DNA of 60,400 nt, filler included, from Hausera hauseri (GCA_046269625.1; 11 parts of 11 records of this genome joined end to end with filler, not necessarily neighbours in it), one strand, 5' to 3'. Counted from the whole stretch's first letter, positions 1 to 8,431 are shown. Translations and numbers: made by a program. The notes: generated by a model not told the origin, from the sequence alone.

Positions 1-301
1 CGGTGTCGGTTAGCGGCCTATCTGGTTAGTGAAAGTTGTGGTAGGTTCCCCTCTTTTTGTTGAGGCAATTCGAAATAATTCTGCTCAATTGGTTTAACTT
101 CTTTGCGTTGCACTTGCTTATTAAGGTTTATTTTCCTTAACTTAGTATCATTATGTGTTAACGATTTTTGGCTCTCTTCCGGTTGATATTTTTTAATTTC
201 GTCTCTCAATCGTTTAATATTTTCTTTTGCTTCTTCCAACATCTTACTTAAAACAGTATAGCTTACAGGTGGTTGCACCTCGCTCGCAGTTTGAATTTCA
301 A

Positions 302-694
302 TTAGGTCAGGATATATTGAGGTTGTTGATATAGGTTTGATAAGTCTTGAAACGAATTTCGTGGTGGTTTTTGTGGAATGCTTGCTATACTACTTATCGA
401 ACAAGTATCCATGTCGGTTATCGAGGGTAAGGGTACTTGTTTTCTTGCTTGATCATTCAAGGAGGGATTATCTGTTTCCTCATCATCAACTATTATACGG
501 CTATTAAACATATAATATGCCGATATCAGCAATAACATGACCGTACTGCTCCACGCATTTGTAGCAGTAATCGCGTGCGTTGGTTGGGCGTCCGCACATC
601 TAAATATTATAAGCAATATTAACGTCAACATAGTTATTGTAGACAACTTAAAGGGATTTCCGAAAATTGTGGGTGGAGTATTAATTGTAGGCAT
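302..694 (-). CDS. Element-associated ORF with two hydrophobic segments and an acidic/low-complexity tail
   Basis: ITMLTLILLIIFRCADA and WSSTVMLLLISAYYMF. Same strand, directly after the third protease-like region. Confidence 0.4.
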   Translation of the reverse strand: MPTINTPPTIFGNPFKLSTITMLTLILLIIFRCADAQPTHAITATNAWSSTVMLLLISAYYMFNSRIIVDDEETDNPSLNDQARKQVPLPSITDMDTCSISSIASIPQKPPRNSFQDLSNLYQQPQYILT

Positions 695-899
695 TTCTAT
701 TATCCGTGTTGGCGTTATTTTTCGTGCTAATGTAGATTCTGTATTCTTTTCACTTATTTGCTTTAATGTAGCATAATTTAATGAGGGTGGAAAAGTCTCT
801 TATCCTGTCACGAACTACCAATGATCATTACATTGAGGCTTTGCATCTTGGTAACCTTCGCAGTTGAATACTATTGATCTCCCCATAACTTTGAGTTAT

Positions 900-1145
900 G
901 CTCCCGTCAGTTTGTATAATACATCGAAACCAATAATAAAATCAGAATACGACTTTTGTGGGTTGGCATAACAGGTAACATCAATATACCCTATAGTCAG
1001 ATCTAATTTTCCGCATGCTTCGGGTATATAATGTGTAATTCGTTTATATAATCGCAAATTTATACGGGTCAGTGGAGTGGTGCTATCAAGTTCCGCATTA
1101 ACGTACTTACCTTACACCTTAACCAATATTGGTATCAGTAAGGGA
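900..1145 (-). pseudogene. Third, more degenerate retropepsin-like domain
   Basis: Manual translation: IPILVKV*GKYVNAELDSTTPLTRIN (DST at 1079-1087), frameshift, ACGKLDLTIG..DFIIGFDVLYKL (IIGFD at 923-937). Not in the ORF track. Confidence 0.55.
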
Positions 1146-1259
1146 TAATCGTTATAATCCTGACGATAATGCATATTATATAACAACTCCAACCTTTTTA
1201 TTTCTTCCTCCAGTTCGTTGACATTTTTTCGATACTTCTCCAGGTCTTTCGTTTTCTCC

Positions 1260-1590
1260 AGCGAAATCGTAGCTACGTCTATTACTATATCGTAATCTAT
1301 TAACGTATCTCTACCTAAAATGCAAGGAATGGTGGAATTTTCTAGTATGTGGTATAAAATCTTTGATCGTTTATTTTTTAATTTAGTCAAGGCTGTAACT
1401 ACGCCTATTACTTTAACTGATTACCATTTATTAGTTTTTGGTTTATCTCACTACTTTCATTCAATTTTAGTTTTAAAATTTCCATTGTAGTTTTACTTAA
1501 GTAATTTTTGGCTGCTCCTTTATCTATTATTGCTTCAATTTTAACTTTATTTATAGTTATAGTTGTAGTTACCATATTATTTGATCCGTG
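1260..1590 (-). pseudogene. Second retropepsin-like domain, downstream of integrase
   Basis: TITINKVKIEAIIDKGAAKNYLS (D-K-G at 1516-1524; AAA is one substitution from Thr ACA), then PCILGRDTL at about 1300-1327. Confidence 0.75.
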
Positions 1591-1749
1591 TTCTATGAAT
1601 GCTATCGTTGTATTTTTATCCACCGATTGCGTTCTGTTCCTCAATGGATACCTACAAGGTGGTATTTGTTCCGTATTCTCGTCTTCCAACTGCATTCTAT
1701 TCCTTAATGGGTACTTGCAAGGTGATGTTTGCTCCAGTTTGCGTTCTTT

Positions 1750-3003
1750 AGCTACTGGTCTACATCGTTGCACACTCATCCAAGAGGTTTTACTCGGGTT
1801 AGAGAGATTTTTTAATTCCACGCTCGATTCAGTTATTTTTAGTATTTTATATGGTCCTTTGTATGGTAACTTCAATTTTGGGCTTTCGCCTGGTTTACAG
1901 GTCTCATTTAATATTAACCAAGTTTCCGATTCGATACACGTGGGGTTTTGTTTTTTTGTCGTACTGATCTTTGTAGATTTCTTGGTGATATTTAATTTTC
2001 AATCCTGCTCTGATCCACGCTTCTTGTAACTTTCCTGAAGAATTGTTGCATAATCCAGTTCCTCCATCAGTTGTGATTGTGGCGATCTATATTCGAGGTA
2101 AATTGGCATAATATCTCGTCTACCATACAACAAAAAGAAGGATAATTCTCAAGTTGTCGTATGAGGACTTTGTCGGTAAGCATATACACAAGGTTTTATA
2201 TATAGATCCCAATCAGCTGGGTGATCATATGCGTAACTAAATATCATAACTGAAAATTGTTTATTAAAAGCTTTTACCGCGCCGTTGGCTTGTGGGTAAT
2301 AAGGCGATGTAAATTTATGATTAACTCCTAGTATTGCCAATAATTTTTCCATAAGTTCGCTACAAAAATTACTTCCTCTATCATATATCATTGTCATTGG
2401 TACTCCATATTCGAATATTACGTCGTCGACCAACCTTCTGGACATAACATCCGTGGTTTGGTTCATCATTGGCATCGCTATTGGAAATTTTGAGTAGTAG
2501 TCAATAGCTGTAAGTACACATGTATTTCCTCTAGCGGTAGTTGATAATGGTCCAATTACATCAACGCCTATACAAATAAACGGTGATGCTAAATCTGGTA
2601 CTGGTTTTAATGGTGTTTTTCTTGCTTGAAAATTTCCTCTTCTTTTTGAACAGACTTGGCAGTTTGTGCACCAATCTTTTACATCATCTGCTATCTTCGG
2701 CCAGTCATATTTTTGCTTAAGTCTACTTAGTGTAGCTTTATAACCTCGATGTCCTCCTAATTGTCCGTCATGGTAGTGCATTAAAAGTTTTGCTCGCATA
2801 TGTTTCGGTACAACCATAAGTAAATCTTCGCTATCCTGGTAGTAGATATTTCCCCTTTCCATGTTATATTTATTTTTGCTCCCTTCTTTGTTTAATCTAT
2901 TACGGATTTTACGAATTTCGTCATCCTTCGCCCGTTCTTTAGCTATAGCTTCGTGTGTGATTGGTATAGATAAAAATGTGCATTTGGTCATTAACGTTTG
3001 CAT
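1750..3003 (-). pseudogene. pol: Integrase (HHCC, DDE core, GPY/F)
   Basis: HDGQLGGH..CQVC, GVDVIGP, YDRGSNF, YYPQANG, and C-terminal PYKGPYKI at about 1845-1870. Confidence 0.93.
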
Positions 3004-3844
3004 TATACACTTCGTCTATCATGATCTGAATTAAATCAATCATTTTATAGTACTCATACAAAATATCCTCTACTAATGGATCTTTATAACCGCTTTGTCT
3101 TATATTTTGTTGATTATCCTTATTAAGTGTTTGAATAATCATACTTATAAGTTGGTTTGTATCTTTGGTGCGCTTCTTTTGTGTTGCTTTGGGTATACTT
3201 GGATGAACTTTTTGTGAATAATATTCTTTCAGATCCTGCATGTCATCATAATCAAAATTTGGATGACCATTATAATCTCGATCGATATCACTTTCTTGCA
3301 ATCTTGACAGGAAATCTGTTTTAGCATTTGCTTTTCCTTTACGATATTTTATTGAAATTTCTAGATCCTGAATTTCTGCAGCCCATTTCATTAATTTTCT
3401 ACTAGTATCCCGTTGTTTCATTAACCACTGCAAAGGTTTTTGATCCGTATATAATATTATTTCTCGTCCGGTAATATAATACCTAAAGTCTCGTAAAGCA
3501 TATGCTATAGCGTAACATTCTCTTTCAATTGTTGACCATCTAGTTTGCGATTCACTTAATGTTTTACTGAGACATGCTATTATTCCTTCGCGTGGTCTGT
3601 CAGGAACTGATTGTCCTAGGACTGCTCCTATCGCATAACCACTGGCATCGGTCATAATTATATATGGATAATTAGGATCATGCAACTGTAATATTAGTGG
3701 GGAAGTTAAGACTTGTTTTAAGACTTCAAAAGATCTCTGGTGTGTTTCTTCCCAATTCCATGTCGTTCCTTTTTTGGTTAATTCTACTAGCGGTTTAACT
3801 ATACTTGCAAAATTATATACGAACTTTCTATAGTAATTAGCCAT
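2939..3844 (-). pseudogene. pol: RT thumb/connection and RNase H
   Basis: TDASGYAIGAVL, STIERECYAI, YTDQKPL, YRKGKANAKTDFLSR. Confidence 0.93.
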
Positions 3845-3849
3845 TCCTA

Positions 3850-5016
3850 ATAGTCTTTGCAGTTCTTTAAGGTATTTCGGTGGTTTTAACTTTTTAAGTT
3901 TTCTACATTTCTAGGATCAGGTTGGATACCTTTACTTGACACTATATGTCCGAAGAAGATAACTGTATTCTTAGCAAACTCGCATTTCTTCATTTTAATC
4001 TTTAAATGAGCTTGTTTCAGTCTATCAAATATTTGAGAGAGATGTTTTAAGTGTTTTTCGAAGTTTTCGGAAAATATTATTACGTCGTCTATGTATACCA
4101 TACAGTAAGTTAGTCCTTGTAATACAAAATTCATACATCTTTAAAATGTAGCAGGTGCTCCTGTTAGACCAAAAGGCATAACATTAAATTCCCATAATCC
4201 AGTTCCTGTATAAAAGGCTGTATTTTGCTTATCCTCCTCAGTTACCTCTACTTGCCAAAATCCACATTGCAAGTCTAAAGTGGTGAATATAGTGGCGTTC
4301 CGCAAGGCTGTCAGCATTTCATCTATTTTTGGTAGTGGATAATTGTCTTTCTTTGTGACATTATTTACTGCTCTAAAATCTACACAAAAGCGTTGTGTTC
4401 CATTTTTTTTCTTTACCAGCACTACTGGAGACGTCCATGGTGAGAAACTTGGTCTGATAATACCACGCTCCACCATTTGTGATATTTGTCTGTCACATTC
4501 CTCTTTCTTAACCTCAGCCATTCTATACGGATTTTCTTTAATAGGGTAGATATTCTCTGTAATTATATGGTGCTGAATAACGTTATTTCTGCCAATATCA
4601 TTATCATTCATAGCTATTATATCTCGATTCCTATGAAATAGTTGCAACAATTTCTTCAATTGATATGGGGTTAATTCGCCATCCTTAAATTTAATATTCT
4701 CATCTTCTACAAGAAACGTTGCTGCGCATACCTTGACTTGTTGTAATTGTCCTAAATTGAGATTTTGTCGCAATCTTATTTCCTTCTTATTAATGTTTTC
4801 TATTGGCTGCTCCAAACATTGTACTTCTTTTGGCACAAATAGAGGGTATTGTAAGATCTTATATTTCTCATTGTTATATAAGTTCGGTTCGAACATACAA
4901 GTTTGCTTAAGGTACTGAGATGGTGTCGTTAACATTACCACTATCTGATGTTGCGGTTTGATAATAACATCATAAGTCAAAGGCATGCTAATTTCCTCTA
5001 TTGGCAAATTAGTCAT
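3850..5016 (-). pseudogene. pol: PR-RT linker and reverse transcriptase
   Basis: ORFs 4141..5016 and 3886..4134: PIKENPYR, RFCVDFRAVN, LDLQCGFWQV, MPFGLTGAPATF*, YIDD (4084-4095), FFGHIVS. Confidence 0.95.
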
Positions 5017-5064
5017 TGTCTATTTGAGAGTCTTTGTCGATATATCCATTGAAATTCCTGTTAT

Positions 5065-5370
5065 CTAGGATAATACGTCCATTCCTATTACTAAAGGTAC
5101 TGGCAATATTTTATCATCGACCACAAATAGGGTAATTGTATAGGGATTATAATCAATTCTTATCTGGATATTTATTTTTCCTAAGAATCGCACTTGTGTG
5201 GAATTGGCTGCTTCTATTACTATGTCACTTGGCATAATCGCTCCCTTTTGATTGTCAGTTAAATATGAATGTTGAATCATCGACACTGATGCACCAGTAT
5301 CTAGTAGTGCCATTGAATTCAATCCGTTAAATCGTACTGAAACATAAGGAATATTTCCTGTTGTTAGAGT
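5065..5370 (-). pseudogene. pol: Retropepsin (aspartic protease) domain 1 of pol
   Basis: PYVSVRFNG..ALLDTGASVSMI (DTG at 5293-5301) and C-terminal LVIGMDVL, within ORF 5065..5805. Confidence 0.92.
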
Positions 5371-5759
5371 GGTTTGTGTCATGAAGATGAATTTTGTATT
5401 ATTCCATCTAGCATCCGCAGTATTATACTGTCGTAGTAGGCTCGGTGGGTAAGTAGAAGTCGGTAAGCAAGTATATTCATCTAAATCCCTTGCCATCGGA
5501 AGATCGTGCATAGACGCAACTTTCATTTCTTTGTATTCCGGATATTCTGGATATTCGTCAATAGGTTCGGGCTTATAATATGTTAGTACTTCTGGTTCGG
5601 AATGTTGTCTGGCTTTCTTTCTTAATAATTTATATTTCACCAAATACTCCTCCACTGTTAACTTAATAAAAGCCTGTAACTTTTGTTCTAATTCTGGGGC
5701 TAGACGAAGTTCTTTTCTTAATTTATCAAGTTCCTTCGAGTGCCAGTACATCAGTACTG

Positions 5760-7640
5760 ATTGAGCCATTGAGGGAAACATCCCAACATAATTTTCCAAG
5801 TACAACCGCGTACTTTCTTTATGTTTCTAGCGGCTCCTATTTGTCTTAGGATGACCATTATAGTAGTAATTATAACATAAATACCAAAATCTCCCGATAT
5901 AACTTGGCCAAAGATAAGGAATTTATTCTAAAAGTCGTAAAGGATCTTTTTAGCTCTTTTTTCTAAATGATCGACTGGTAATAACATTCCGTAATTGGGT
6001 ACTCTATCTGGTCCTTTAATGACAGTATATACAAATTCAGTAATAACTTTCTCTCGGATATTCTGGAATAATACTTGCTTTCTTACCGCTTCTAAGTCGT
6101 TTAATGAATAAAGTCCACTGATAGGGAGTTCCCTATTTACTTTAAATTTTATACCTTTATCTAACGGTAATAACACAATCGTCTGAGGAGTGTTCATCGT
6201 AGCTGGTGGACGGGTCTTAGTCCATCTTCCGTCATTAAGTTTAAAAGCTGGATAAAAATCTTTATAACATGGTGCAAAAGTAATTTCAGTAGGTAGTAAC
6301 AATTTCCGTGTAATCGGATCTACATACCCATATTTGTCTATATTTTTATCATTGTATCAAACCATTAGTTAATTCGTGCAGTTTGCTTTTGAGGATGTTA
6401 CTGGTGTTACTTCTATCGGCGGACACCGATATACATGAAGTATTTCTACTTGTACCCTACCAAATGTTCTGGGGCGGTAACCCATAATCAAAGCAATGTA
6501 TTCGGGAAATTGTCTAGCTAATATCAAGTTATGTTGATTCAGTTTTTGAGTAATTTAACAGTCTCTTAATACCATCATATTATATAACTCAACTAAATCC
6601 ATTTTCGCAGTATCATAGATGTAATCTATCTTGTTATTCGTATATAAGTACCACTTTATATCTTCGGTTGGTAACTTTCCGGTATTCACTAGTGTTTCTT
6701 TTGTTACAAACAAGTCTTCATAAGATGTTGAATATACCGAATTTGATCCACAAGTGGATACTGCTCCTTTGCATGTTAACACTATTCCATCTTTATTATT
6801 GGATGACATCAAGACTTTCAGGGAAGGGGTTTGTTTTAGAGTTCGTGGAGTAGGTAGACTTATGTTATGATTGTGTTCTGGTTCTTGGTATTCATCATCA
6901 TAGTACAAGTCGCCTTGTATTTCATACATAGATACTTGTTTCAGGAAAGCTAATGGACATATCATAATCGTCTTTTCTCAAACTACTGTGGATTCTCCTA
7001 GTATACATACTCCATCAGAGTACGTGCAGGATGGTGCAGTCAACATTTTTCCTGTATTCGCATCAAATTTTTACAAATTTTACTTTGTTTTCTTTTAAGG
7101 TAACGGTATAATCTTCTATTTGCACTACAGAGGATTCCTTTTGACCGTTTATCATTATTTTTTCTCCATCACAACCTCCTCCATATCCAGGCCACATTTT
7201 CCCAGCTGTAACTATTCGAGAGTGAACTCGTTTTCCTATACCTGCTTGTATTGGTTGTTTTAGACCTACATGAATTGAATCTATAGCCTTTCTACAATTT
7301 TCAGCAGTTATTGTTACTGGTTTAGCTAATCCTATGGGATAATCACTGAATTCCATGAATTATGACCACAATTTTAAGCGAATATTACTTTATTAACCTG
7401 ACATTCCTTTACTTGCACTTGTTGATAACTAATTCTCTGATACAAATTGTAATTGTAAGGACATTCCTTTCTTACTGATATCGAATTTGCGTTTTGGCAT
7501 TTACCTTTATCCACTAATGATAGTCTGGCTCTTATTTCTGGTCTGGAACAATCATAAGCCTCTAACACTTTCGCAGTTTTTAGAGTGCTTACTGCTATCA
7601 AGTATAATAATAAACGAATAATTTGTACTACCCAATCTGA
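5760..7640 (-). pseudogene. Chuvirus (Jingchuvirales/Monjiviricetes)-like class III fusion glycoprotein, disrupted
   Basis: Manual translation through stops gives, in order: hydrophobic signal-like stretch, AYDCS..LSL..GKC, VKECQV..NCGHNSW, AG..GCDG, C..STSYEDLF, YTNNKIDYI..LYNMMVLRDC, FPEYIA..EILHVYRCPPIEV..NCTN..VDPITR, SGLYSLNDLEAVRKQVLF, and TM block KFLIFGQVISGDFGIYVII. This matches the motif order I recall for chuviral G. Confidence 0.82.
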
Positions 7641-8431
7641 AATATTAGTATTCTTTGGATATATTAATGTAGTGGCATCAAATTTCTTGAGAATTTCATC
7701 CCAATCACCATGTTTCTTTACCCAATCTTTTGTTAACCTATCCATATGATAAGCCAAATCCTTTACTATATGGCGTAACTTAGCGTCAACCTCAGTTTGA
7801 TTTTTAAAACTAACCACTATACATCCCAATGCCATTAGCAGTCTATTTTGATCACAATCCTTTAATAATTGTGTCAATTCTATACTCAATCCACCTTTCA
7901 GTTCCTATTTCCGTAATAGTCTTGTAATCTGCGATGAAAAATTTCTAGTCGTCTCTATTATAGACTGTAATGGAATTGTTGTAATTGTTGGTACCTTCTT
8001 AAGTTTCTTTGGGTTAGCTTTCTTGATTAATTGTTCTGAAAGTTTATAAGTTGTCAATGTTACTTTTGGTATATTTATTTCAGGCTGGGCTGATGTTCCT
8101 GGAATAGGATCTTGTACTTGCTCATCCTATTGTCATTAATAGTGAACCGTTGAAAATTATTATATAAGACGGTTTCTAATGTTTCTCGTTGGTCTCTACG
8201 CTTTCGCGACAAAGGTCTTTTCTTTCATTGTTTTTCTGGTTTTTCTTCTTCCTCGGGATTTTCATTATCATCACTTACTGGGTTAAAATCACATTTTCGT
8301 GGTCTTCCTTCTTTCTTCTTAGTACCAATTTCCATAGTAATCTGATACTCTTTTCCTGTAAGGAGTCCATAATCTACGACATAGTCATTGTCAATGACTG
8401 ATCTACCATAAACATCAGTTTTTGCTATTAT

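What the first reader, a model, noticed from the sequence alone, without database searches (positions are those of the whole stretch)
900..1600. Two extra retropepsin-like domains downstream of integrase (three proteases in one element)
Seen: the integrase C-terminal ORF (1408..1875) runs in frame into IEAIIDKGAAKNYLS, later ILGRD. After a short coiled-coil linker a third unit reads V*GKYVNAELDST..DFIIGFDVL. Known: retropepsins work as dimers and LTR elements normally encode one, before RT. Inference: the tandem PR2-PR3 pair could fold as a single-chain pepsin-like dimer, or act as an inactive regulator for processing an unusually long polyprotein.
Basis: partly seen in the sequence, partly recalled or inferred. 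Interest (0 to 1): 0.8.

Follow-up and report, generated by a model that had tools for sequence, protein, structure and literature searches.

The report
Extra protease pair after retroelement integrase
A decayed copy of a giant, virus-like Ty3/gypsy-type retroelement carries, after its integrase, a second genuine retroviral-type protease domain and a third, degenerate protease-like domain; both are conserved across the many sister copies, an arrangement I did not find described for such elements.

Summary
On the minus strand the window reads: G-like fusion glycoprotein, PR1, RT, RNase H, integrase, PR2 (1575-1259), a helical linker, PR3 (1147-863), then more coding sequence.

- **Part of the element.** The PR2-PR3 cassette is not a nested foreign element. 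At least 40 sister contigs (78-91% identical) carry it next to the integrase. One sister has a single 804-aa open frame from integrase to PR3. Another has a 1,382-aa open frame from PR3 onward.
- **Under selection.** Pairwise dN/dS among 27 copies is 0.16 for PR2 and 0.12 for PR3, against about 1.0 in a shifted frame.
- **PR2 is a true retropepsin.** Most sisters read DTG; the window's DKG is private. Pfam scores exceed the curated cut-offs. AlphaFold2 gives pLDDT 85-95, and Foldseek matches Ddi1, HIV and EIAV proteases.
- **PR3 is weaker.** It has no Pfam or PDB sequence hit, and AlphaFold2 failed. It does align in register to a 71-sequence retropepsin profile (0 of 200 shuffles reach the score). 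It reads DTT, never D-[TS]-G, and has a shortened flap.

So the element has two proteases plus a probable pseudo-protease. Whether PR2 and PR3 form a single-chain dimer is untested. The architecture matches the planarian Burro elements; papers I could search do not mention a protease after integrase.

The parts
5928..7889 (-). Context: pieces of a G-like class III viral fusion glycoprotein (env-like), directly upstream of PR1
   Evidence: Pfam PF24664 Monjiviricetes_fusion hits on three ORF pieces, covering profile positions 247-509. The profile N-terminus is found in a sister. The junction with PR1 is conserved in at least 40 contigs. In sisters L061 and L063 the glycoprotein end, a hydrophobic anchor and the PR1 N-extension form one open frame.
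5065..5805 (-). PR1: the canonical retropepsin ahead of RT. D-T-G is at 5293-5301 and VIGMD at 5077-5091. It has a 150-aa N-terminal extension.
   Evidence: Pfam RVP scores 26.2 bits (cut-off 20.7) and gag-asp_proteas 27.1 bits. DTG is present in 5 of 6 sisters.
2149..5016 (-). RT (5016-3886), RNase H (3844-2939) and integrase zinc finger plus core (3003-2149), Ty3/gypsy type, with frame breaks
   Evidence: Pfam RVT_1, RT_RNaseH, RT_RNaseH_2, Integrase_H2C2 and rve.
1576..2148 (-). Integrase C-terminal region and a spacer holding a tandem ~20-aa repeat (PPC[KR]YPLRNR...), leading in frame into PR2
   Evidence: Translation. Continuous with integrase in the 804-aa open frame of sister L055. dN/dS is 0.08 for the integrase C-terminus and 0.17 for the spacer.
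1259..1575 (-). PR2: the second retropepsin domain. The triad is at 1516-1524 (DKG in this copy) and ILGRD at 1307-1321. This copy has a one-base length difference near 1410, so PR2 is split over two frames.
   Evidence: Sisters read DTG in 20 of 29. Pfam gag-asp_proteas scores 31-32 bits (cut-off 28.2); Asp_protease_2 and Asp_protease are also at or above cut-off. The PDB profile hit is the Ddi1 retroviral-protease-like domain, E=0.002. AlphaFold2 pLDDT is 85-95. Foldseek target-normalised TM-scores are 0.59-0.73 to Ddi1, HIV-1 and EIAV proteases. dN/dS is 0.16. The frame break is shown.
1148..1258 (-). Charged, helix-prone linker of about 37 aa between PR2 and PR3
   Evidence: Translation. 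AlphaFold2 predicts a helix for model residues 117-135 at modest confidence, pLDDT about 54-65. dN/dS is 0.07.
863..1147 (-). PR3: a degenerate retropepsin-like domain. The triad position is 1079-1087 (DST here) and IIGFD is at 923-937. This copy has in-frame stops at 1112-1114 and 896-898.
   Evidence: DTT in 26 of 35 sisters and never D-[TS]-G. hhalign against a 71-sequence retropepsin profile: local score 19.6, P=0.002; global score 17.4 against a shuffle mean of 2.75 (sd 1.8, max 11.2); 0 of 200 shuffles reach either score; all landmarks are in register, with two gaps in the flap region. All ten best ESM Atlas feature hits with a family are retropepsin-like, score 0.92-0.94, but with 151 shared features. 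dN/dS is 0.12. Negative results: no Pfam hit, no PDB sequence hit, AlphaFold2 pLDDT below 40.
1..862 (-). Continuation of the same reading frame in the family: two hydrophobic segments (within ORF 302-694) and a coiled-coil-like stretch (ORF 18-278). It runs off the contig.
   Evidence: Sister L052 has a 1,382-aa open frame from PR3 through this region and 1,000 aa beyond. At least 40 contigs match window 1-900. No Pfam family.

Best explanation
The window is a decayed copy of a giant, env-bearing Ty3/gypsy-type retroelement. Its very long polyprotein reads: env-like glycoprotein with membrane anchor, PR1, RT, RNase H, integrase, PR2, helical linker, PR3, then more than 1,300 residues with membrane segments and internal repeats.

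PR2 is a bona fide retropepsin. The family keeps DTGA and I-I-G-R-D, the flap has normal length, and the fold is predicted with confidence. It is only 19% identical to PR1, so it is not a recent duplicate.

PR3 is a retropepsin-derived domain that has lost the glycine of the catalytic triad (DTT) and about 15 residues of the flap hairpin. It is as strongly constrained as PR2.

The most likely working (inferred, not shown) is this. PR2 is a second aspartic protease that serves the C-terminal half of the oversized, membrane-tethered polyprotein. PR3 is its non-catalytic or half-catalytic partner lobe, or a dimerisation or regulatory module. PR1 keeps the classical Gag-Pol maturation role.

Shown: the domain order, continuity of the reading frame, family-wide conservation and selection, PR2's identity and predicted fold, and PR3's motif state.

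Inferred: PR3's homology (about 0.8), PR2's activity, and any PR2-PR3 pairing (about 0.3).
For: - **Contiguity.** At least 40 contigs span window 850-1900 at 78-91% identity, and at least 40 span window 1-900. Six longer contigs are collinear with the window.
- **One frame.** L055:1893-4304 (minus strand) is an 804-aa open frame holding Integrase_H2C2, rve and the PR2 profile hits, and it ends in PR3. L052 has a 1,382-aa open frame starting in PR3. The window's stops and frame break are private to this copy.
- **Selection.** dN/dS is 0.07-0.17 in every segment, against 0.99-1.16 in the +1 frame.
- **PR2.**
- **PR1 versus PR2.** 19% identity over 90 aa, E=5e-4.
- **PR3.**
- **Membrane context.** The env hydrophobic anchor is in frame with the PR1 extension in L061 and L063. 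Hydrophobic segments follow PR3.
Against: - PR3 gets no Pfam hit in any of 13 copies, even at E up to 10.
- PR3 has no PDB sequence hit and no hit among 1.84 billion representative proteins.
- PR3 got no confident AlphaFold2 model.
- Its ESM Atlas shared-feature count (151) is in the range the tool gives for 'chance or distant relative'. The PR2 control gave 185-192.
- The column-shuffle null used for hhalign controls composition only. It does not control for generic beta-strand periodicity.
- No protease activity, cleavage site, dimer or expression was shown.
- No LTRs were found, so the element's ends and full content are unknown.
Confidence: 0.72

Rival explanations
1. PR2 is a real second protease, but PR3 is not a retropepsin homologue. 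It is a conserved small beta-rich domain of other origin whose 'ELDTTT' and 'IIGLD' strings mimic retropepsin motifs by chance.
For: No Pfam hit, no PDB sequence hit and no phmmer hit. hhalign against the shallow PR2 profile finds nothing in register. AlphaFold2 pLDDT is below 40. The ESM Atlas shared-feature count is low. The triad glycine is absent in all 35 copies.
Against: The global profile-profile alignment puts six landmarks in the right order: the first strand, the D-T-x loop, the following helix-like turn, A-x-G, I-I-G-x-D and the terminal strand. No column shuffle reached either observed score (0 of 200); the global score of 17.4 compares with a shuffle mean of 2.75 (sd 1.8). All ten best ESM Atlas hits with a family fall in the one clan that was predicted beforehand. 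PR3 sits directly behind a true retropepsin, at a start-to-start spacing (about 143 aa) like that of the tandem retropepsin protein P0001.
Confidence: 0.18
2. The PR2-PR3 segment is a fragment of another retroelement (its gag-protease end) nested in or abutting this copy, not part of the element.
For: Retropepsins normally lie before RT. The window copy shows a frame break and stops at the unit boundaries.
Against: The same junctions occur on both sides in at least 40 independent contigs. Integrase, PR2 and PR3 form one open frame in L055, and PR3 plus the downstream region form one in L052. dN/dS is as low as in integrase. The breaks are private to this copy.
Confidence: 0.02
3. The cassette is a captured retropepsin module, Ddi1-like or from another element. 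It is used against host proteins (host manipulation, in the spirit of the apoptosis and ubiquitin domains reported in Burro elements) rather than to process the element's own polyprotein.
For: PR2's nearest solved structures and PDB sequence hits are Ddi1 retroviral-protease-like domains. PR2 is only 19% identical to PR1. The closest integrase relative, P0017, has no PR after its integrase, so the cassette is a lineage-specific gain. Burro elements carry host-like regulatory domains (PMC6431247).
Against: Pfam scores for the retroelement-type family (gag-asp_proteas, 31-32 bits) are at least as high as for the Ddi1-type family (26-28 bits). No ubiquitin-like or UBA domain accompanies it. The ESM Atlas neighbours of PR2 are retroelement-type clusters. 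Nothing here bears on substrates.
Confidence: 0.12

Closest known systems
Burro / GYPSM1 giant gypsy-like LTR retroelements of planarians (Grohme et al. 2018; Arkhipova & Yushenova 2019, PMC6431247)
   Same: Both are Ty3/gypsy-type pol elements of very large size with thousands of copies. Both have the otherwise unique placement of a mononegavirus-like fusion glycoprotein in frame directly upstream of PR.
   Different: The published description lists gag, regulatory domains, env, PR, a dUTPase-like domain, RT, RH and IN. It mentions no protease after integrase. I had no Burro sequence to compare. The host of this window is unknown; the assembly holds several different animal mitochondria. No dUTPase-like signal was found between PR1 and RT.
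Retropepsins (clan AA: Ty3/gypsy and retroviral proteases, Ddi1 retroviral-protease-like domain)
   Same: PR2 has DTGA, a flap of normal length, I-I-G-R-D, profile scores above cut-off and a confidently predicted retropepsin fold. PR3 has the same order of landmarks.
   Different: The position is after integrase instead of before RT. There are two such units in tandem in addition to the normal PR1. PR3 has DTT and a shortened flap.
Pepsin-like (A1) bilobal aspartic proteases, thought to derive from duplication and fusion of a retropepsin-like gene (own knowledge)
   Same: Two homologous half-barrels lie in one chain. The first lobe has a flap and the second lacks one, as in pepsin, where only the N-lobe carries the flap.
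   Different: Pepsins keep D-[TS]-G in both lobes, whereas PR3 does not. The lobes here are joined by a helical linker of about 37 aa. No bilobal structure was obtained.
Tandem retropepsin proteins in public protein sets: P0001 (326 aa, metagenome contig) and P0010 (kinase plus two retropepsin-like stretches)
   Same: Two retropepsin-type domains lie in one chain. In P0001 the start-to-start spacing is about 144 aa, like PR2 to PR3.
   Different: Both P0001 domains keep DSG. They are not linked to RT or integrase, and their identity to PR2 is only 26-32%.
Multi-protease viral polyproteins, such as papain-like plus 3C-like proteases of nidoviruses (own knowledge; analogy only)
   Same: A very long, partly membrane-embedded polyprotein has more than one protease placed near the regions it would serve.
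   Different: The protease classes and viruses are unrelated. No cleavage map exists here.

Membership tests
Retropepsin (Pfam gag-asp_proteas / Asp_protease_2 / RVP; clan AA): PR2 | Profile match above the curated cut-off | tested here: met
   In open sister frames, gag-asp_proteas scores 31.3-32.4 bits (cut-off 28.2), Asp_protease_2 27.2-28.7 (24.3) and Asp_protease 26-28.3 (26). The window copy's N-half alone scores 20 bits, below cut-off.
Retropepsin: PR2 | Catalytic D-[TS]-G(-A) triad | tested here: met
   DTG in 20 of 29 sister contigs. The window copy itself reads DKG at 1516-1524.
Retropepsin: PR2 | Second conserved motif, hydrophobic-hydrophobic-G-[RM]-D, about 60-70 residues after the triad | tested here: met
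   ILGRD at 1307-1321 in the window. IIGRD, IVGRD or ILGRD in 21 of 32 sisters.
Retropepsin: PR2 | Retropepsin half-barrel fold | tested here: met
   AlphaFold2 pLDDT is 85-95 over residues 1-106. Foldseek E is 3e-7 to 1e-4 with target-normalised TM-scores of 0.59-0.73 to Ddi1, Rickettsia APRc, HIV-1 and EIAV proteases. This is a prediction, not an experiment.
Retropepsin: PR2 | Dimer-dependent, pepstatin-sensitive proteolysis | not testable with these tools
   Needs expression and an assay.
Retropepsin: PR3 | Profile match above the curated cut-off | tested here: not met
   No Pfam family for any of 13 copies, or for the 1,378-aa ORF, at E up to 10. No PDB sequence hit.
Retropepsin: PR3 | Catalytic D-[TS]-G triad | tested here: not met
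   DTT in 26 of 35 contigs, the rest DIT, DST, DTA, DTI, YTT, YYT or YAT. No copy has G at the third position.
Retropepsin: PR3 | Homology detectable by profile-profile comparison, with landmarks in register | tested here: met
   hhalign against 71 retropepsin domains: local score 19.6 (P=0.002); global score 17.4 against a shuffle mean of 2.75 (sd 1.8); 0 of 200 shuffles reach either. A smaller 18-sequence profile gave 17.2, reached by 5 of 300 shuffles. The signal is weak in absolute terms (hhalign probability 5-13%).
Retropepsin: PR3 | Retropepsin half-barrel fold | tested here: inconclusive
   AlphaFold2 pLDDT is 27-40 for PR3 in both runs. The alignment holds only near-identical sister copies for this part.
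Ty3/gypsy (Metaviridae-type) LTR retroelement | PR-RT-RH-IN order with gypsy-type RNase H and an H2C2 integrase zinc finger | tested here: met
   RVP, RVT_1, RT_RNaseH, Integrase_H2C2 and rve occur in this order on the minus strand.
Ty3/gypsy (Metaviridae-type) LTR retroelement | Long terminal repeats | tested here: inconclusive
   No long direct repeat in the window. No similarity between about 1.5 kb upstream and up to 7 kb downstream extensions. Contigs end before the element does.
Burro-like giant retroelements | Env-like fusion glycoprotein in frame between the gag side and PR | tested here: met
   Monjiviricetes_fusion pieces at 7889-5928 lie directly before PR1. The junction is present in at least 40 contigs. 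In L061 and L063 one open frame runs through the glycoprotein end, the anchor and the PR1 extension. The feature is described in PMC6431247.
Burro-like giant retroelements | dUTPase-like domain between PR and RT; planarian host; sequence similarity to Burro1-4 | tested here: inconclusive
   About 215 aa lie between PR1 and RT, with no Pfam or PDB sequence hit. The host is not identified. No Burro sequence was available for comparison.
Pepsin-like (A1) single-chain bilobal protease | Two homologous lobes in one chain, each with D-[TS]-G | tested here: not met
   There are two lobes in one chain, but the second has DTT. A working resemblance is not excluded.

The most novel reading that the evidence does not exclude
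PR2-linker-PR3 folds as an asymmetric single-chain retropepsin pseudo-dimer: a flap-bearing catalytic lobe plus a flap-less lobe with an altered triad. That would be a natural retroelement-borne counterpart of the duplication-fusion intermediate postulated between retropepsins and pepsins. It would act as a dedicated second protease for the C-terminal, membrane-associated half of a giant polyprotein.
Probability: 0.3. Interest if true: 0.8.

Novelty: new variant of a known kind. Interest (0 to 1): 0.55.

Why it matters
LTR retroelements and retroviruses are taught as having one protease, placed before RT, which works as a homodimer.

A family with thousands of copies that keeps two further retropepsin-type domains after integrase under strong purifying selection shows that this layout can be extended when the polyprotein becomes very large. 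One of those domains is intact; the other has a changed triad and a truncated flap.

It also offers a natural tandem, asymmetric retropepsin pair. Such a pair bears on how bilobal pepsins arose and on how pseudo-proteases regulate their active partners.

If the family is Burro-like, this adds an unannotated functional module to the largest known LTR elements, which are abundant and expressed in a regeneration model (PMC8532177). The practical stakes are modest. This is domain-architecture biology of a transposon, and the function remains inferred.

Tried and rejected
- **Shallow AlphaFold2 run.** PR2-linker-PR3 with only sister copies as the alignment gave mean pLDDT 33.7, useless even for PR2.
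- **Second AlphaFold2 run.** Adding 11 distant PR2 homologues rescued PR2 but not PR3.
- **hhalign of PR3 against the shallow PR2 alignment.** It gave only an 8-column match in the wrong register. BLASTP of PR3 against PR2 gave the same.
- **PDB sequence search with the PR3 profile.** Nothing.
- **Word search.** The PR2-PR3 region within an 804-aa query gave nothing at E<=0.001.
- **Exhaustive phmmer of PR2-PR3.** 16 weak hits, all to PR2, so no depth was gained for PR3.
- **Sequencing runs.** Two coded runs, neither on record as RNA. Laying them gave only short repeat unitigs. They gave no information on this copy's breaks or on expression.
- **dUTPase-like domain between PR1 and RT.** No Pfam or PDB sequence signal.
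- **Host identification.** Abandoned. The assembly holds at least six full-length COX1 genes, and the two I compared are 73% identical, so no single mitochondrion can be tied to the element.
- **Nested foreign element.** Considered and rejected.
- **Recent duplication of PR1.** Considered and rejected: PR1 and PR2 are 19% identical.
- **Consensus or repaired sequence.** None was built or used. Alignment tools printed majority lines on their own, and I did not use them.

Full report
**What is in the window**

The 8,431-bp piece is a whole short contig of a fragmented assembly of 868.6 Mb in 909,086 contigs. All coding signal is on the minus strand. From 7889 down to 1, Pfam gives this order:
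- pieces of a Monjiviricetes-type viral fusion glycoprotein, 7889-5928;
- a canonical retropepsin PR1, 5805-5065 (LDTGA at 5290-5304, VIGMD at 5077-5091);
- reverse transcriptase;
- a gypsy-type RNase H;
- an integrase with H2C2 zinc finger and core domain, ending near 2149.

No long direct repeat, and so no LTR, lies in the window.

**Check of the observation**

- ORF 1408..1875 (minus strand) continues the integrase C-terminal region and ends in ...IEAIIDKGAAKNYLS... D-K-G is at 1516-1524.
- ILGRD is at 1307-1321.
- After a charged stretch comes V*GKYVNAELDST, with D-S-T at 1079-1087, and IIGFD at 923-937.

In this copy ILGRD is in a different frame from the ORF that holds DKG. The copy differs in length by one base from three sisters near 1410. 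It also has in-frame stops at 1112-1114 and 896-898.

**Is the segment part of the element?**

- A search of the window's own genome with 850-1900 found at least 40 contigs at 78-91% identity, most over the full length.
- The same holds for 1-900, for the glycoprotein/PR1 junction at 5500-6400, and for 7600-8431.
- Six longer contigs are collinear with the window from RT or integrase through the cassette and beyond.
- Sister contig C442912 (L055:1893-4304, minus strand) is one 804-aa open frame. It holds Integrase_H2C2, rve and the PR2 profile hits, and it runs to the end of PR3.
- Sister C726546 (L052) has a 1,382-aa open frame that starts in PR3 and continues about 1,300 residues downstream.
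- At the two places where the window has stops, 33 of 34 and 33 of 35 sister contigs have sense codons.

**Selection**

I projected 27 well-covered copies onto a naturally open sister frame and computed pairwise Nei-Gojobori dN/dS per segment.

| Segment | dN/dS |
|---|---|
| Integrase C-terminus | 0.08 |
| Spacer | 0.17 |
| PR2 | 0.16 |
| Linker | 0.07 |
| PR3 | 0.12 |
| Same segments read in the +1 frame | 0.99-1.16 |

Most divergence among copies is synonymous. The family diversified as functioning lineages, and PR3 and the linker are as constrained as PR2 and integrase.

**PR2**

- The window's N-half alone gives weak hits to five aspartic-protease families, E=0.001-0.1.
- Intact sister frames pass curated cut-offs: gag-asp_proteas 31-32 bits against 28.2, Asp_protease_2 27-29 against 24.3, and Asp_protease 26-28 against 26.
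- The triad is DTG in 20 of 29 sister contigs. DKG in the window is a private change. I-[IVL]-G-R-D follows in 21 of 32.
- A profile of 15 sister copies hits the Ddi1 retroviral-protease-like domain in the PDB, E=0.002, end to end.
- With 11 distant homologues from an exhaustive HMMER search added to the alignment, AlphaFold2 models residues 1-106 at pLDDT 85-95.
- Foldseek matches Ddi1, Rickettsia APRc, HIV-1 and EIAV proteases, E from 3e-7 to 1e-4, with target-normalised TM-scores of 0.59-0.73.
- The ESM Atlas control gives 0.95 with 185-192 shared features, all neighbours retropepsin clusters.
- PR2 is only 19% identical to PR1 over 90 aligned residues, E=5e-4. It is an old or captured paralogue, not a recent duplicate.

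**PR3**

The negative results are real.
- No Pfam family for 13 copies, or for the long ORF, even at E up to 10.
- No PDB sequence hit.
- No hit in 1.84 billion representative proteins.
- No usable AlphaFold2 model, pLDDT 27-40.
- No copy has D-[TS]-G. 26 of 35 read DTT, and the aspartate is kept in 32 of 35.

The positive results are as follows.
- hhalign of the PR3 alignment against an 18-sequence retropepsin alignment gives a 73-column in-register match, score 17.2. 5 of 300 column shuffles reach it.
- Against a 71-domain profile built from unrelated proteins, the local score is 19.6 (P=0.002; 0 of 200 shuffles reach it; null mean 10.5, sd 2.1).
- The global score against that profile is 17.4, against a null mean of 2.75 (sd 1.8, max 11.2; 0 of 200).
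- The global alignment puts six landmarks in order: the first strand; ELDTT under aLiDTG; the turn after it; A-C-G-K under A-n-G; IIGLD under ILGxD; and the terminal strand. Two gaps total about 15-17 residues around the flap hairpin.
- All ten best ESM Atlas feature hits with a family are retropepsin-like clusters, score 0.92-0.94. The shared-feature count of 151 is what the tool calls 'chance or distant relative'.

The family was predicted in advance from the motifs, so I take these results together as fair support (about 0.8) for a retropepsin-derived domain. The domain has lost the triad glycine and part of the flap. By itself it is unlikely to be a conventional homodimeric protease.

**Context and the closest known kind**

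- In sisters L061 and L063 the glycoprotein's C-terminal part, a hydrophobic anchor and the N-terminal extension of PR1 are one open frame.
- An env-like gene in frame between the gag side and PR is exactly what Arkhipova & Yushenova (2019, PMC6431247) describe for the giant Burro/GYPSM1 gypsy-like elements of planarians. They call it the first such case, with hits to mononegavirus fusion glycoproteins. Their domain list ends at integrase and names no further protease.
- Two other papers that mention Burro (PMC8532177; search) and two literature searches for a second or tandem protease in LTR elements turned up no such report. The searched library is partial, so this is absence of evidence only.
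- Overlapping contigs show coding sequence for at least 1.5 kb upstream and at least 4.5 kb downstream of the window, with no LTR. The element is therefore at least 14 kb.
- I could not compare with Burro sequences or identify the host. The assembly contains at least six full-length COX1 genes, and the two I compared are 73% identical.
- Membership in Burro is therefore an inference from architecture.
- The closest integrase relative in the protein databases is P0017, 47% identical through the integrase C-terminus. It continues into a signal-like segment, a 330-aa ectodomain-like region and a membrane anchor, with no protease. The cassette is thus a lineage-specific gain at a place where related elements attach membrane proteins.

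**How it most likely works**

Shown:
- one very long frame with a membrane-anchored glycoprotein, PR1-RT-RH-IN, PR2-linker-PR3, then two pairs of hydrophobic segments and three internal repeats;
- all of it under purifying selection.

Inferred:
- The polyprotein is membrane-tethered at both ends of the pol region.
- PR1 does the classical maturation.
- PR2 has an intact catalytic signature in the family and is a second active aspartic protease placed at the boundary to the C-terminal extension.
- PR3 is either its partner lobe in an intramolecular pseudo-dimer or a non-catalytic dimerisation or regulatory module.

Two pieces of own knowledge bear on the pseudo-dimer. Tethered single-chain HIV protease dimers are active, so a 37-aa linker is no obstacle. 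Pepsins also have a flap on only one lobe.

I put the pseudo-dimer at about 0.3. Nothing here tests activity, substrates or pairing.

**Verdict**

The element belongs to a known kind (a giant env-bearing gypsy-like element) with a module I did not find reported, so I rate it a new variant of a known kind, interest 0.55.

All tests used natural sister sequences or per-codon tallies.

Noticed in passing
window 5928-7889 (minus strand); L061, L063: An env-like Monjiviricetes/class III fusion glycoprotein lies directly upstream of PR1. In two sister copies it is in one open frame with PR1's N-terminal extension, through a hydrophobic anchor. This is the unusual env-before-pol order reported for Burro elements.
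   Followed up: partly
L052:4068-8213 (minus strand) and L052:2495-3940 (minus strand); window 1-862: Downstream of PR3 the family has a 1,382-aa open frame with two pairs of hydrophobic segments and three internal repeat modules, each holding an 'EPLFIGS' motif. A 482-aa ORF with a fourth, related module follows. No Pfam family matches any of it.
   Followed up: partly
window about 1600-1740 (minus strand): A tandem repeat of about 20 aa (PPC[KR]YPLRNR-MQ-x-ED-x-NT) lies between the integrase C-terminus and PR2. The relative P0017 has a single similar motif (YNLRSK) at its integrase end. It could be a processing site or an integrase tail motif.
   Followed up: no
window 4420-5064 (minus strand): About 215 residues between PR1 and the RT domain match no family in Pfam or by PDB sequence search. 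Burro elements are reported to have a dUTPase-like domain at this position.
   Followed up: partly
G000 contigs C677661, C233294, C444356, C688771, C31113, C272174 (L081, L082): The assembly holds at least six different full-length mitochondrial COX1 genes. The two I compared are 73% identical at protein level, and one looks vertebrate-like by eye. The assembly therefore mixes several animals, and the element's host cannot be read from it directly.
   Followed up: partly
P0017 (821 aa, JGI contig of 3,047 bp): The closest integrase relative (47% identity) has its integrase fused in frame to a signal-like segment, a 330-aa ectodomain-like region, a membrane anchor and a short tail. That is an env-like protein attached to integrase, with no protease.
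   Followed up: partly
P0002 (2,658 aa, Caenorhabditis nigoni, CAO4382312.1): This predicted nematode polyprotein has a Monjiviricetes_fusion / herpes gB-like segment upstream of a retropepsin and gypsy-type RT-RH-IN, and it gives two gag-asp_proteas matches. The order is similar. It may be a real element or a merged gene model.
   Followed up: no
sister copies, window 850-1960 equivalent: Copies differ mostly at synonymous sites (dS 0.5-0.8, dN about 0.06). The family looks like many long-lived active lineages rather than one burst followed by neutral decay.
   Followed up: partly
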